Origin: Fonticula alba ATCC 38817
Taxonomy: Eukaryota; Protista; Nucleariida
Assembly: GCA_000388065.2 (NCBI GenBank)
Contig: KB932204.1
Length of the DNA stretch: 30,461 nucleotides
Direction: 5' to 3' (one strand)
The notes under the pieces were generated by a model, which saw only the letters and a program-made list of their open reading frames with translations, ran no database searches and had not been told where the DNA came from. Position 1 is the stretch's first letter. Each line of letters opens with the position of its first letter. Of this stretch, positions 7,555-13,304 are shown one piece after another. Position numbers and translations under genes: made by a program.

Positions 7555-7868
7555 AATAACAGCCTCGCCAACTGCCAATGGTACAACAAGGTGCCGGTGA
7601 ATCGAGGACAATCTATTTCCCTCCCTGCGGGGGGAAGACAGGCCCCGCCAGGGGACGGGAGGGAGGGGGGGGNNNNNNNNNNNNNNNNNNNNNNNNNNNN
7701 NNTACAACTGCACAGGGACGTGTGCGCGCGCACACGCGCACGCATGCACACACGGGCACTGGGAGAGAAAGATGATTGGGTGCCCGGGAGGACAGGCGCC
7801 GCGCCGAAAGTTGCACACATCATGGGGGAGGAGCCCGCGAGAGGAGGGGACACGCCCATGGGGCCGGG

Positions 7869-10800
7869 CTAAGGGCCACCTTCGCCCGACTTGGGGTCCG
7901 AAGTCGGGTCACTGCCGCTGCCGCTGCCGCTGCCGCTGCCGCTGCTGGCGGCGGCGGCGGCGGCGGCCTCGCGCTTTTTGGATTTGCCGCGCCGCTTGGG
8001 CCGGGTGCGGGTTTCGGCCGAGAGCGGCCCCGTCCTGGTGCCTGATGGCAGGAGGCCGATATTCCGCAGCCCGGCGTCCAAGACCGACCGGTCGATGGAC
8101 CGGTCAGCCGTCGGGGCGCCCGGGGCCGGGGCCACGACCGGCGGGTCGGGCTGTCCAGATGGCACGGGGGGCTCTGGCGCCAGGGCCAAGCCGCTGGCCA
8201 TGGTCATATTCACGACATCCTGCTCCTCGGCCGCCTCCGGGCCTTCATCCGAGAGCGAGGACAGCGAGGTGAGATGCTGGTGCGTCGGGTTCTGGTGCTT
8301 TTCCCGCATCAGCGGGCGCTGCTGCGCCACCTCCCTGATGCTGTTCAAGAGCAGGTCCAAATTGGGCATCACATCCAGCAGGGGCGAACGGCCGGTTGGC
8401 ACGGCCCGATCCAGCACCCGAGGCTGGGCAACCTCCGGAGGGGCATCCTTCGGGCCCGGTCGGCTGGGCATGAACGAGGCAAAGGGCGAGATGGCGGACG
8501 GGGCAGACGCCGGGGACTTTGGCAGGCGCTGCGTCAAGGACTGAAGGGCATTCTGAGGAAGGGCACGTTGCAGTGGAGCGTCAAAGTAACGGCCGGAGGG
8601 GAAGGAGGAGGAGGAGGCGGCGGCGGGAGGGGAGGAGTAAAAGGAGAAGGAGCCGTCTGCCGGCGCGGCAGAGGGCGATCTTGACGGCGACCCCCCCAGC
8701 GGCGGGGGGGCAACCCCAGGCGCGCCCGGGCCGCCGCCGGCACCATCAAGCCCACGCCGGTCGGCGGGCAGCCCCCTCGGGGCATTGGGCACAAGGTCGG
8801 GAAGCGCCCATCGGGAAGTGATGAGGCGCTCATGGCCAGCCACCATCCCAGGCACCGAGGGCGCCAGGAGGGTGGACGTGGCCAGGGAAAAGAGGAGATC
8901 CTGCTCGCGAGAGGCGGCCAGGGTCGCCGGCGGTGGGGCAACATTGGCCGGGGCGTCCTTCGGCGGGAGCAGGTCTGGCGGAAGTTGCGGGAGCCGTGCT
9001 TGTGAAATGCTCGGCGGCTGCTTCTTGGCGAAGGGGATGGAAAGCTCGGAGTTCAGTGACCCGGGGTTCATCGGGGTCCCATGCAAGCGCGTCAGCTCGA
9101 GCGAGGCGATGGTGAAGAATCCCAGCTCGAAAGCGGTCCCCGGCCCGAAAGCCCGCATAATCGGCCGGGCATCGAAAGAGAAGGACTTGTAGTCGCCCGA
9201 GGAGGATTGCCGGCGCGGAACCCGGGCCAGGGTCATCCGTAGCTGAATCCGCCAACAGAGGGAGGAGGAGAGGGGGAAAGGGTCAGGCCGAATGGCAAAC
9301 ACCAGCAACCAGGCGGCAATACATCCATGCATCCATGCACGCATCCATGCACGCATCCATGCACGCATCCATGCACGCATCCATGCACGCATCCATGCAC
9401 ATACCTCTCCGGGATCGGGGGATGGTAGGAGCCCGCTTCGGTAGAGCTCATATGCGATCAGCCCTGGGTGGAGATAGAACACCCAGGGGGTGGGGAGAAG
9501 GGAGGGGGGGAGACAGGGCCGCCAAAGGTCAGTTGCTCGGCGCCCTCGAAGAAGATGGCGTTGCCACAGGGGGGGGGGGGGGCGGGGGAAGGTGCGTACG
9601 GGCAATCCTGTAGATCGTCTCATTCAAGGGATGCGTCGCCGGGACGGTGGCATAAATGGCTCGGGCATTTGCTGACAAGGGGGGTGAGCATGCCGAAGCG
9701 AGGGGGGTGAGCATGCCGAAGCCAGGGGGGTGGGCATGCCGAAGCCAGGGGGGTGAGCATGCCGAAGCGAGGGGGATGAGTGCCTAGCCAGGGCAGCCAA
9801 GCCAGACGCGAGGGCAAAGATGAACGCAGCGGGAGAAGGCAAGAAAAAAAGGCAGGCGCACAATAGTCCTTCGGAATGTGAGGGTCGATGAAGGAGTCGA
9901 CAGTCACGGCATCCAGATGGCCAAGCAGGATGTTGACCGAGTTGCCGCCACTTATTTGACGACTGAAGGCCATGAAGACGCCATCGAGGAGAGGCATGGG
10001 TCAGCAGGGGATTGGCCGGGCGGAGAGGCGGCGAGGGCAGGGCGGATGGACGAAAGCCCGAGGGGGGCGAGAGGAGGGAGGGGCGAAGGGGCGAAGGGGC
10101 GAAGGAGGGGAAAAAGAAAACATGACTCACATCACTGGCTCCAGCTGCCCCAGTGTCTCCAACGCCGCGTCCATGAACTCCGGCCCAAAAGACAGGCACA
10201 GGGACTCGGCCATGCGGATGATCAGCCTGTCGGCCGGGATCAGCATCTTCTGGTGAAACTTCTGCCCCGGCGGCCGGGGGGCGTCCCACCACCAAACAAA
10301 GCGCTCGGAGGACCTGAAGACCGAGGGGGTCCGCCGGAAGATTTGGTTGTTTTTCAGCTCCCGCCGGGCGGCCAGCTGCTGGAGCTCCATGGCCTTCGAC
10401 GAGTTGTCCATCGCATGGGGATGGGTGTGCTCCACATTCAGGAGCATGCGGTGGAAGCGCTCGAACAGGATGTTCAACGGGGGAGGCGGGGCCGCGCCGG
10501 GCGGCCGGGCCGGACTGTGAAGTGGCAGCGTCAGAGCATGGCTCATTGGAGTCCGCTGCTCGACGGCCATCACCTCTCGGGTGCGTAGTTGCCGCCGGAA
10601 GCCACTCAAGCTGACCGGCCCGGTCATTCGGCCCGGATAGGCCTCCAGCTCGGGCATGTCGCTGTCAGGATGCAAGTCCGAATCCGGGTCGTCCAAATCC
10701 TCGGAACTGCTCGCGCGCTCGAATTGCCGCGCCAGGTACTCCTCCTGAGCCGGATCATCCCCATCATGCCAGGGGAGGGGGACTTCCTGCCGGCCGGTCT

Positions 10801-11218
10801 CTCGCCAGAGACTCCGAGAGTCCAGGAAAGTGGCATCCACCATGGACCGGCCCGGGACACTCGGAGCAAGGATACGGGGGGGCGGTAGCGCCGCCGGGCC
10901 CAGGATGGAGGGATCCCGCAAGACGGCCGTCGCAAGGGCCGAGGCCAGGCTGTCAAGCTGATTGTTCGAGAGGAAGCCCTTCTGAGTGAGGAGGGAGTTC
11001 AGATTCGAGTCACATTCCGAGGGGGGAGTCGCTTTGTGGGGATCGTCACCATCATCGGCCTTGTCCTCGGTGGGGGCGTCCCCGGAGGCAGGGGCCCCGG
11101 CACAGGGTGTCGAGTCATCCGGACGACAGAGCGCCCGGCCAGCCAGCGGGCGGGACTCCTTCGAAAATGATCGCCGCCCAGGTCGGAGGATCGCGGAGGA
11201 GGCACGCCACTGGCGCAT
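7869..11218 (-). CDS. ASCC1/AKAP7-like 2H-phosphoesterase-fold protein with degenerate HxT motifs and a putative mitochondrial presequence, 5 exons, about 897 aa
   Basis: Exons 11218-10131, 9962-9862, 9671-9600, 9463-9405, 9242-7869 (2694 nt, phases consistent). Spliced segments align in order with the ASCC1 phosphoesterase domain as recalled: MSHALTLPL; LFERFHRMLL; IRQISGGNSVNILL; ARAIYATV; ELYRSGLL; FSFDARPIMRAF..FELGFFTIASLEL..SIPF. An in-frame stop lies just upstream (11272-11270). Confidence 0.75.
9323..9400. repeat. 12-bp tandem repeat (ATCCATGCACGC), 5 full copies plus partial copies, in intron 4 of the 2H-like gene
   Basis: Full units at 9331, 9343, 9355, 9367, 9379; partial units on both sides. 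Confidence 0.95.
9679..9790. repeat. 23-bp minisatellite GGGGGGTGAGCATGCCGAAGC(C/G)A, 4 copies plus 1 degenerate, in intron 2 of the 2H-like gene
   Basis: Units start at 9679, 9702, 9725, 9748, with a degenerate unit at 9771. There are no spacers, so this is not CRISPR. Confidence 0.93.
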
Positions 11219-12216
11219 GCTACTAGCAGCTGGAGTGCAGGCTGCCCTGCGACCCAGCTCGCAGCGAGGTCAGCCACCACAGGCCAAGTGGCTGGTGAGA
11301 AGTGGTCACTTCTGGGCGGGAGGTGAGACGGGCAGGGGAGGGGGCAGGGAACACCCTGCGGAAGGGGAGCAGCAAAGATGGGCGACAATAGGACGGGGGA
11401 GCAGGCAGCGCAGACAGGGTGCGGGGGGGGGNNNNNNNNNNNNNNNNNNNNNNNNNNNNNNNNNNNNNNNNNNNNNNNNNNNNNNNNNNNNNNNNNNNNN
11501 NNNNNNNNNNNNNNNNNNNNNNNNNNNNNNNNNNNNNNNNNNNNNNNNNNNNNNNNNNNNNNNNNNNNNNNNNNNNNNNNNNNNNNNNNNNNNNNNNNNN
11601 NNNNNNNNNNNNNNNNNNNNNNNNNNNNNNNNNNNNNNNNNNNNNNNNNNNNNNNNNNNNNNNNNNNNNNNNNNNNNNNNNNNNNNNNNNNNNNNNNNNN
11701 NNNNNNNNNNNNNNNNNNNNNNNNNNNNNNNNNNNNNNNNNNNNNNNNNNNNNNNNNNNNNNNNNNNNNNNNNNNNNNNNNNNNNNNNNNNNNNNNNNNN
11801 NNNNNNNNNNNNNNNNNNNNNNNNNNNNNNNNNNNNNNNNNNNNNNNNNNNNNNNNNNNNNNNNNNNNNNNNNNNNNNNNNNNNNNNNNNNNNNNNNNNN
11901 NNNNNNNNNNNNNNNNNNNNNNNNNNNNNNNNNNNNNNNNNNNNNNNNNNNNNNNNNNNNNNNNNNNNNNNNNNNNNNNNNNNNNNNNNNNNNNNNNNNN
12001 NNNNNNNNNNNNNNNNNNNNNNNNNNNNNNNNNNNNNNNNNNNNNNNNNNNNNNNNCCCCCCCCCTCTCCCCCTCCTCGGCAGCCGCAGGACCGGGCTTT
12101 TGACGAGGAGGCCTCCATCTCGCGAGCCGGGGCCGCCGGCATAGCGCACTCTCCCCGCCTCCTCCCTCTCGCGCACTTGGCTTTCCTGTCTTCGCTTCTC
12201 CGCAAATCCCGATACA

Positions 12217-13304
12217 ATGTTCGGCGCCCTCTGTCGGCAGTCGGCCGTGCTGGCAGCGCCCGGCCGGGCCGCTTCCCTTCGGGCTGTGCGCTCGGCCTTG
12301 GCCACGCGTGCGGCCAGCTCTGCGTCCAATGTCCCGCCACCGGACCCGGCCGATGAGGACACCCCACCCGCCGGGGGCCGATCCTCACTGTCCAGCATCG
12401 TCAATGGGATCTCCTTCTCGCCGGTCAACACCCGGACCTTCGATTATCGCCCGGTCGATGTGGACTACACCCAGGCTCGCGGGGCTTCCGAGGGCGAGGA
12501 GGACCCCGACGAGGTGATCCCCTCGGCCGAGGAGGACTTCCATGGGGCCGATGCGGCGGGCCACTTTTTCAACGAGAACTTCCACGAGTCCATGTTCACC
12601 GAGGGCGGCACCACCCCCGGAGCTGGGGGCGCATTGCAAACGGTCCGCCGCGGGCCCACCCGCATGGAACTTCTCCTCCGCCAGAGTGCCGAAGATGGCG
12701 AGGGCTACGACTCGGATGAGGACGATGAGTTTCAGATTGTCAACGCCATGGAGCTTGCCTTGTGCGCGTCCGCCCTGCCCTGCCCTGTCCTGCCTTGCCC
12801 TGCCCTGCCTCGCCCCCCTTCCCTCGCGAATGCACTTTCCACCCTCTTCTCCCTCCTTTCGTGCCACGCCCCACCCCCTCCTCCCCCCTCCCCGACATGC
12901 CCCTAACCCATGAGGATCCAGCAAATCCGGCGACCTTGCCTTTCGGACGCGCCAGCAGGAGGATGTCATTCGGGCGCGCGTCAACATCTTGAACTTCCTT
13001 GGTACCTCCCCTTCCCCCGCATGTCCCCCCGGCACTCTGCCTCTGTCTCTCCTCCTCCCTCTCTCTCTCTTTGCTCCCTGCTCCTCCGCCATTCTGCCTT
13101 TCCCTGAAGATGCCCATCATGCTGACACTGGCGGCGGGCCCGTGTCTCTGCATAACACCCGCGCCCACAGCCACCTTCGATGCCTTGGTTCGGGCAGTCC
13201 CGTCGGAGGCCGAGCGCCAACGTCTCCGGAAGAAGTACCACCACGATTTGTTGGCCTTCAACGATGCCCTCCTCCGGTTGCTACGCTACCGGATGAGCGA
13301 GTGA
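12217..13304 (+). CDS. Hypothetical protein with an N-terminal mitochondrial-type presequence, 3 exons, 252 aa
   Basis: Exons 12217-12761, 12922-13001, 13171-13304 (759 nt, GT-AG). A CTAAC branch motif lies at 12903 and CATAAC at 13151. The N-terminus is Arg/Ala/Ser-rich with no acidic residues (MFGALCRQSAVLAAPGRAASLRAVRSALATRAASS), followed by an acidic middle and a helical C-terminus. No family recognised. Confidence 0.75.

What the first reader, a model, noticed from the sequence alone, without database searches (positions are those of the whole stretch)
9030..11218. Catalytically dead 2H-phosphoesterase (ASCC1/AKAP7 fold) apparently retargeted to mitochondria
Once spliced, the middle of this protein follows the ASCC1 phosphoesterase domain in order. 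Recalled human segments versus this protein: THFLAFFL ~ SHALTLPL; FLRFQEEVL ~ FERFHRMLL; INDISGG ~ IRQISGG; VDVLYAKV ~ ARAIYATV; FQASGLI ~ LYRSGLL; SFDGRNILKLF ~ SFDARPIMRAF. At the positions of the two catalytic HxT motifs it reads RLIIRMA (about 10228-10208; ASCC1 KLHLTIG) and ELRMTLA (across the 9405/9242 junction; ASCC1 KLHATVM), so both histidines are gone. No KH domain is evident. The N-terminus (MRQWRASSAILRPGRRSFS..RALCR) looks like a mitochondrial presequence, while the disordered C-terminus ends near an NLS-like cluster (RPKRRGKSKKR). This could be a pseudoenzyme RNA- or nucleotide-binding adaptor in the organelle, possibly dual-targeted. I do not know of a described equivalent.
Basis: partly seen in the sequence, partly recalled or inferred. 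Interest (0 to 1): 0.75.

Follow-up and report, generated by a model that had tools for sequence, protein, structure and literature searches.

The report
Histidine-less 2H-like orphan protein, Fonticula
This expressed gene of the amoeba Fonticula alba encodes a protein with no detectable sequence relatives, whose one folded part is predicted to look like an ASCC1/AKAP7-type RNA-end phosphodiesterase but lacks both catalytic histidines, so it is probably a non-enzymatic binding module, and its proposed mitochondrial address is plausible but untested.

Summary
The gene is real. It has five GT..AG exons on the minus strand (11218..7869) and encodes an 897-aa protein that matches, piece by piece, the public record H696_02617 of Fonticula alba. 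An RNA-derived contig confirms introns 1 and 2.

No sequence method links it to anything. Pfam, PHROGs, NCBIfam, PDB sequences, the word search and HMMER against 1.84 billion representatives return only the protein itself.

The 2H-fold reading rests on one source, the ESM Atlas. Its model of residues about 206-500 matches ASCC1-like and AKAP7-like (PF10469) clusters. TM normalised by the target is 0.64-0.68 for the short, PDE-only clusters and 0.39-0.56 for the longer ones, over 196-236 aligned residues. My own AlphaFold run failed (pLDDT 34).

The loss of the catalytic dyad does not depend on any alignment. The domain has a single H-x-S/T, at its far C-terminal end. There is no KH domain.

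The N-terminus looks like a presequence by simple measures, but no trained predictor or 5' reads were available.

Verdict: partly supported. It is a probable 2H pseudoenzyme and a new variant of a known kind, of modest interest. The scan had not noted this on other DNA.

The parts
10131..11218 (-). Exon 1 (residues 1-362 plus two bases of codon 363), starting at the first ATG after an in-frame stop 17 codons upstream
   Evidence: The exon 1/2 junction is seen in an RNA contig.
9862..9962 (-). Exon 2 (residues 363-397, in part)
   Evidence: Both junctions are seen in the RNA contig of run X2.
9600..9671 (-). Exon 3 (residues 397-421, in part)
   Evidence: Its 5' junction is seen in RNA. Its 3' junction is supported only by GT..AG, by the frame (the intron is 136 nt, not a multiple of 3) and by the public annotation.
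9405..9463 (-). Exon 4 (residues 421-440)
   Evidence: No read coverage.
7869..9242 (-). Exon 5 (residues 441-897 and stop TAG). Most of it is a Pro/Ser/Ala/Gly-rich tail with no detected domain.
   Evidence: RNA contigs cover 7759-8590.
11120..11218 (-). Presequence-like N-terminus (residues 1-33). The first 20 residues hold 6 basic and 0 acidic residues. Its amphipathic moment is high, and R-S-F|S at residues 16-19 fits the R-3 cleavage pattern.
   Evidence: simple measures only
9072..10561 (-). Putative 2H (AKAP7/ASCC1-type) domain, residues about 220-497, interrupted by introns 1-4. It carries an insert of about 65 residues (263-325) between the first helix and the first motif strand.
   Evidence: ESM Atlas structure and feature hits. 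No sequence-profile support.
10184..10228 (-). Region of the first HxT-equivalent strand (residues 331-345). The register is either I333/R335 or S339/C341. There is no His in either.
9225..9242 (-). Second HxT-equivalent strand (L441-R-M-T-L-A446; E440 lies at 9405-9407 in exon 4). Arg442 sits where the catalytic His would be, and Thr444 is kept.
   Evidence: hhalign best local alignment to ThpR H125-I-T127 (not significant). His positions.
9075..9083 (-). The only H-x-S/T of the domain (H494-G-T496), at the domain's C-terminal end. It aligns with the non-catalytic Y-T-P tail of ThpR.
7971..8003 (-). Basic cluster at residues 854-864, resembling a nuclear localisation signal, followed by an Ala run and a Gly/Ser tail
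11432..12056 (.). Assembly gap (run of N) between this gene's start and the divergent neighbour's start at 12217

Best explanation
An expressed nuclear gene of Fonticula alba encodes an 897-aa protein that is mostly disordered.

Its single folded module (about 220-497) most likely descends from the AKAP7/ASCC1 branch of the 2H phosphoesterase superfamily. It has diverged beyond detection by sequence and has lost both catalytic histidines. At the second motif an arginine takes the histidine's place and the threonine is kept. At the first motif the positions are Ile/Arg or Ser/Cys, depending on register.

Inferred mechanism: the V-shaped groove no longer hydrolyses cyclic or 2',5' phosphodiesters. 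It still binds a phosphate-bearing ligand (a nucleotide or an RNA end), and the long disordered arms tether partners. That would make it a pseudoenzyme adaptor.

The N-terminus has the composition, amphipathicity and cleavage pattern of a mitochondrial presequence. I put import into mitochondria at about even odds.

Shown: the gene model, expression and splicing of introns 1 and 2, the lack of any relative, and the lack of a two-HxT dyad. Inferred: the fold (one predicted model), ligand binding, and localisation.
For: - Gene model and identity.
- Spliced RNA contig.
- ESM Atlas, by structure: residues 206-500 match five PF10469 cluster sets. TM by query is 0.54-0.59 and TM by target reaches 0.66 over 196-213 aligned residues. 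With residues 60-500, TM by target reaches 0.68 over 203-236 aligned residues.
- ESM Atlas, by features: all ten best named hits are 2H families, at 0.87-0.89.
- Only one H-x-S/T lies in residues 205-500, at 494. There is no His in 323-377 or 411-493.
- The best hhalign local alignment to the E. coli ThpR family places R442-M-T444 on H125-I-T127. Fragment alignments of 300-395, 360-440 and 395-500 fall on ThpR 17-93, 47-123 and 92-170, broadly in order but disagreeing in register where they overlap.
- His-to-Arg at the second motif abolishes activity in AKAP7 (H185R) and MHV ns2 (H126R) (PMC4161237).
- N-terminus: it is the only 20-residue window in the protein with at least 6 basic and 0 acidic residues (p about 0.002 from the protein's own composition). 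Its hydrophobic moment is in the 99.9th percentile of the protein. It carries an R-3 motif.
Against: - No sequence or profile method supports 2H membership: Pfam on the whole protein and on six sub-ranges, PHROGs, NCBIfam and PDB phmmer.
- hhalign, Smith-Waterman and semi-global alignments to ThpR are no better than shuffles.
- AlphaFold2 without an alignment gave pLDDT 34.
- The Atlas feature scores are below 0.9, which the tool itself calls a lead only. Its two searches count as one source.
- With no relative in any database, conservation and selection cannot be judged. The domain could be decaying.
- The GC-rich genome makes Arg/Ala/Ser-rich termini common, which inflates presequence-like scores.
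- AKAP7 carries an N-terminal nuclear signal, and this protein has a basic cluster near its C-terminus.
Confidence: 0.55

Rival explanations
1. The fold and the loss of the histidines are as above, but the protein is nuclear or cytosolic. On this reading it is the fast-evolving Fonticula descendant of an ASCC1/AKAP7-like protein that lost its KH domain, and the basic N-terminus is not a presequence.
For: The closest structural matches are ASCC1-like and AKAP7-like clusters, including KH-less ones of 244-255 aa in plants and ascomycetes. Full-length AKAP7 is nuclear through an N-terminal signal. ASCC1 sits in nuclear foci. A basic cluster lies at residues 854-864.
Against: The N-terminal 20 residues are acid-free and amphipathic, and carry an R-3 pattern. 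They hold no classical K-K/R-x-K/R nuclear signal.
Confidence: 0.3
2. It is not a 2H domain at all. The Atlas model and feature hits are artefacts of a language model working on an orphan, compositionally biased sequence, and the protein has some other fold or no stable fold.
For: Every sequence-based test is negative. AlphaFold2 gave pLDDT 34. The Atlas model of the whole protein has pTM 0.36 and mean pLDDT 0.45. Feature scores below 0.9 occur with shuffled proteins.
Against: TM of 0.64-0.68 normalised by 244-255-aa targets, over about 200-215 aligned residues, to several distinct PF10469 clusters is hard to get by chance. The order of hydrophobic strands and helices, and the R-S-G ... x-M-T-L-A-R segment, run parallel to ThpR.
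Confidence: 0.18
3. It is still an enzyme, using non-canonical groove residues (for example Arg, Ser, Cys or a relocated His) on an unknown substrate.
For: Eleven histidines lie in the domain and their positions in space are unknown. Canonical ASCC1 itself shows no activity on the standard substrates, so the chemistry of this branch is poorly understood.
Against: All characterised 2H enzymes need both histidines. H-to-R or H-to-A mutants are dead.
Confidence: 0.05

Closest known systems
ASCC1 (ASC-1 complex subunit p50), PDE domain; crystal structures reported in PMC11214414
   Same: The predicted fold of residues about 206-500 matches ASCC1-like clusters best (TM by target 0.66-0.68). The elements come in the same order: N-terminal strand, helix, motif strand, helix, two strands, helix, motif strand, C-terminal strands.
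   Different: No KH domain and no HxT motifs. There is no detectable sequence similarity. It has an insert of about 65 residues, about 220 disordered residues before the domain and about 400 after it, and a presequence-like N-terminus.
AKAP7/AKAP18 central domain (2',5'-phosphodiesterase that also binds AMP/CMP; PF10469)
   Same: Structural matches at TM 0.54-0.56 by target. It is a stand-alone 2H domain flanked by targeting and scaffolding sequence.
   Different: AKAP7 keeps H93 and H185 and is an active 2',5'-PDE. It has a PKA-binding helix, which has no Pfam match here.
KH-less 'AKAP7-like phosphoesterase domain' proteins of ascomycetes (Atlas cluster, 244 aa)
   Same: Same side of the eukaryote tree (Holomycota). 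No KH domain. TM by target 0.64-0.65.
   Different: Those proteins are recognised by Pfam PF10469 and are short. Whether they keep the histidines was not checked here.
Bacterial ThpR/LigT RNA 2',3'-cyclic phosphodiesterase
   Same: The best, though non-significant, local alignments are colinear. They match x-M-T-L-A-R to H-I-T-L-L-R and S-L-C-L-S-F-G to H-L-T-L-A-F-L-G.
   Different: ThpR is 176 aa with both HxT motifs intact. Alignment scores are no better than shuffles.

Membership tests
2H phosphoesterase superfamily, AKAP7_NLS/ASCC1 branch (PF10469) | Significant match to a family profile (PF10469, PF13563, PF02834 or PF07823) | tested here: not met
   No 2H family at E <= 10 for the exons, the whole protein or six sub-ranges. 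PHROGs and NCBIfam also gave nothing.
2H phosphoesterase superfamily, AKAP7_NLS/ASCC1 branch (PF10469) | Two-lobed alpha+beta fold with a V-shaped groove | tested here: inconclusive
   The ESM Atlas model matches PF10469 clusters at TM 0.54-0.59 by query and up to 0.68 by target. This is one predicted model from one source. My own AlphaFold2 model was unusable.
2H phosphoesterase superfamily, AKAP7_NLS/ASCC1 branch (PF10469) | Two His-hydrophobic-Ser/Thr-hydrophobic motifs on adjacent strands | tested here: not met
   The only H-x-S/T in residues 205-500 is H494-G-T496 at the domain end. There is no His at either candidate strand.
ASCC1 proper | N-terminal KH domain with GXXG, joined to the PDE domain | tested here: not met
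   No KH hit in Pfam. Extending the Atlas query to residue 60 adds only 23 aligned residues against a KH+PDE cluster.
AKAP7 | C-terminal PKA RI/RII-binding helix (PF10470) | tested here: not met
   No Pfam hit.
2H phosphoesterase superfamily | Cyclic or 2',5' phosphodiesterase activity | not testable with these tools
   Needs recombinant protein and assays.
Mitochondrial matrix proteins with a cleavable presequence | Basic, acid-free, amphipathic N-terminal 15-40 residues with an R-2/R-3 cleavage pattern | tested here: met
   6 basic and 0 acidic residues in the first 20. Hydrophobic moment at the 99.9th percentile of the protein. R16-S-F|S19. These are simple measures, not a trained predictor.
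Mitochondrial matrix proteins with a cleavable presequence | Verified start codon and demonstrated import | not testable with these tools
   No reads over 10200-11431. There is an in-frame stop 17 codons upstream of the ATG. An assembly gap lies at 11432-12056.

The most novel reading that the evidence does not exclude
A holomycotan amoeba imports into its mitochondria a histidine-less 2H-fold protein that reads phosphate-terminated RNA ends or nucleotides, with arginines replacing the catalytic residues. It would act as an adaptor in organellar RNA metabolism. I found no description of such a role for the 2H fold.
Probability: 0.12. Interest if true: 0.55.

Novelty: new variant of a known kind. 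Interest (0 to 1): 0.33.

Why it matters
If the fold call holds, this is a natural 2H-superfamily member with both histidines replaced. At the second motif it carries the same His-to-Arg change that is used in the laboratory to kill AKAP7 and coronavirus ns2. It would be a useful natural case for asking what the 2H groove does without chemistry. That bears on ASCC1, whose own substrate is still unknown.

It also shows how far a domain can drift. Nothing in 1.84 billion representative proteins resembles it, yet a language-model fold still recognises it.

The significance is limited. It is known from a single species, so conservation cannot be assessed, and neither function nor location has been tested.

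Tried and rejected
- Exon-by-exon Pfam scans gave nothing.
The public record P0001, which the exon pieces match exactly, was used in their place.
- Pfam on P0001 and on six sub-ranges, PHROGs, NCBIfam and PDB phmmer on two ranges gave no 2H hit.
- The word search with the domain at E <= 10 gave nothing (one search was a parameter slip). HMMER over 1.84 billion representatives found only the protein itself.
- AlphaFold2 on a single sequence gave pLDDT 34, so no fold search was run on that model. I did not use the second AlphaFold job with a ThpR alignment, because the result would have been circular.
- I fetched E. coli ThpR as a 2H seed available by reference. Its search returned only close enterobacterial relatives, which gives a shallow profile.
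- hmmsearch --max ranked the real domain 150th among 2000 shuffles. hhalign gave P 0.07-0.3. Smith-Waterman and semi-global alignments were no better than shuffles.
- An internal-duplication test of the N lobe against the C lobe was not significant.
- A direct comparison with human ASCC1 was left out, because no ASCC1 sequence was available by reference and I did not type one.
- RNA runs X10 and X11, listed under 'same species label', laid no reads at all and so give no test.
- A search for the locus tag in papers found nothing. Mazumder et al. 2002 is not held.
- A canonical ASCC1 elsewhere in the Fonticula genome could not be looked for with these collections. The scan's notes mention none.
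Full report
WHAT IS THERE

The region is GC-rich eukaryotic DNA. On the minus strand, an ATG at 11218 opens a 363-codon ORF. Four short introns follow, all GT..AG: 10130..9963, 9861..9672, 9599..9464 and 9404..9243. A long last exon ends at TAG 7871..7869.

I searched the exons one by one by reference and did not join them myself. The word search with the last-exon ORF returned one protein, P0001. It is 897 aa, 'hypothetical protein H696_02617 [Fonticula alba]'. Each exon translation is an exact, ordered substring of it, and the three split codons give its residues 363, 397 and 421. The contig is KB932204.1 of GCA_000388065.2. From there on I used P0001 as the reference for the spliced product.

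EXPRESSION

Two small 2012 runs hold perfect-match contigs over 7759-8590. One 167-nt contig joins 10162-10131 | 9962-9862 | 9671-9638, so introns 1 and 2 are removed exactly as modelled.

Introns 3 and 4 have no coverage. Intron 3 is 136 nt, so it must be spliced out to keep the frame. Intron 4 is 162 nt, in frame and free of stops, and is largely a 12-nt tandem repeat. The 5' end has no coverage.

In the contiguous sequence an in-frame stop lies 17 codons upstream of the ATG. A 625-N assembly gap (11432-12056) separates the gene from a divergent neighbour that starts at 12217.

All quoted segments exist at the stated positions. Whether they resemble ASCC1 more than chance would give could not be shown.

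- Pfam gives no 2H family at E <= 10 for the whole protein or for six sub-ranges.
- PHROGs, NCBIfam and PDB sequences give nothing relevant.
- The word search at E <= 10 gives nothing.
- HMMER against 1.84 billion representatives finds only the protein itself.

At the sequence level the protein is an orphan.

FOLD

AlphaFold2 without an alignment failed (mean pLDDT 34), so I ran no fold search on that model. The ESM Atlas holds this exact protein.

- Its model of residues 206-500 matches five different sets of clusters, all carrying PF10469 (AKAP7_NLS). These are plant KH+PDE proteins, plant ASCC1-like proteins of 255 aa, vertebrate AKAP7 and ascomycete AKAP7-like proteins of 244 aa.
- TM is 0.54-0.59 by query and up to 0.66 by target, over 196-213 aligned residues.
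- With residues 60-500 the same families return, with TM by target up to 0.68. Against the KH+PDE cluster only 23 more residues align, so no KH domain is present.
- The feature search gives only 2H families among its ten best named hits, at 0.87-0.89. The tool rates that level as a lead, not a finding.

This is one source of evidence, and the models on both sides are predictions. I put the 2H fold at roughly 0.8.

THE CATALYTIC SITE

This part needs no alignment. In residues 205-500 the only H-x-S/T is H494-G-T496, at the very end of the domain. There is no histidine in 323-377 or in 411-493. A canonical site of two H-x-T/S motifs on adjacent strands (PMC11214414) cannot exist here.

To place residues, I fetched E. 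coli ThpR by reference and its family.

- The alignments are not significant: hhalign P 0.07-0.3, and the real domain ranks 150th among shuffles with hmmsearch --max.
- The fragment alignments fall broadly in the same order along ThpR, but they disagree where they overlap: the strand at residues 373-379 is placed on ThpR 87-93 by one fragment and on about 47-53 by the next.
- Helix, R-S-G, loop and L-R-M-T-L-A-R fall on the ThpR helix, R-S-G, loop and P-H-I-T-L-L-R. That puts Arg442 at the second catalytic histidine, and Thr444 is kept.
- Either way there is no histidine.
- The H494-G-T segment aligns with the non-catalytic tail of ThpR.
- His-to-Arg at the second motif is the classical inactivating change in AKAP7 (H185R) and MHV ns2 (H126R) (PMC4161237).

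TARGETING

The first 20 residues hold six basic and no acidic residues. This is the only such window in the protein. Drawing residues from the protein's own composition gives this pattern with p about 0.002.

The 11-residue hydrophobic moment peaks at 0.81, the 99.9th percentile within the protein. R16-S-F|S19 fits the R-3 cleavage pattern. An acidic stretch follows from residue 34.

These are simple measures. No trained predictor was available, Arg/Ala-rich termini are common in this GC-rich genome, and the start codon has no read support. I put mitochondrial import at about even odds.

The basic cluster at 854-864 is real. Its role is unknown.

CONTEXT

The neighbours are ordinary housekeeping genes: Nop16, a MYST acetyltransferase, a 252-aa orphan, DNA polymerase delta subunit 2 and a class II aminoacyl-tRNA synthetase. 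They give no functional hint.

INTERPRETATION

Most likely this is a much-diverged AKAP7/ASCC1-type 2H domain that has lost its chemistry. It sits between about 220 disordered residues and about 400 disordered residues.

The inferred mechanism is non-catalytic binding of a phosphate-bearing ligand in the groove, with arginine(s) in place of the catalytic residues, and the disordered arms acting as a scaffold.

Canonical ASCC1 itself shows no activity on 2-5A, 2',3'-cGAMP, 2',3'-cAMP or 3',5'-cAMP. A binding role for this branch is therefore not far-fetched.

The rivals are:
- the same module in the nucleus or cytosol;
- no 2H fold at all;
- a non-canonical enzyme;
- a decaying domain in an expressed orphan gene, which cannot be excluded because no orthologue exists for a test of selection.

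NOVELTY AND SCORE

Pseudoenzymes occur in most enzyme superfamilies (one search lists reviews). I found no paper on a natural histidine-less 2H domain or on this locus. The library is partial, and the founding survey of the superfamily was not readable.

I rate it a new variant of a known kind, of modest interest.

It is unrelated to this branch, and I did not test it.

Noticed in passing
window 9329-9400 (intron 4): The intron is largely a perfect 12-nt tandem repeat, six copies. It is 162 nt long, in frame and free of stops, so if retained it would insert 54 residues just before the second motif strand. No reads cover it.
   Followed up: partly
window 9678-9780 (intron 2): A 23-nt tandem repeat, 4.5 copies at 93% match, fills most of intron 2. 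The RNA contig shows that this intron is spliced out.
   Followed up: partly
window 12217-12906 (+): The divergent neighbour is annotated as a 252-aa protein with no Pfam family. It opens with an Arg/Ala/Ser-rich, acid-free N-terminus that also looks like a mitochondrial presequence. Either the two genes share a promoter and perhaps a destination, or such termini are simply common in this genome.
   Followed up: no
window 11432-12056: An assembly gap of 625 N flanked by poly-C/poly-G runs lies in the shared upstream region. The true distance between the two genes, and any upstream exon, is unknown.
   Followed up: no
runs X10 and X11: Two large 2026 RNA runs, offered as 'same species label' but coded as a different organism, laid no reads at all on 3.7 kb of this gene. 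They probably do not contain this organism.
   Followed up: no
window 7912-7945: A perfect hexanucleotide repeat (5.7 copies) encodes the Gly/Ser run at the C-terminal tail of the protein.
   Followed up: no
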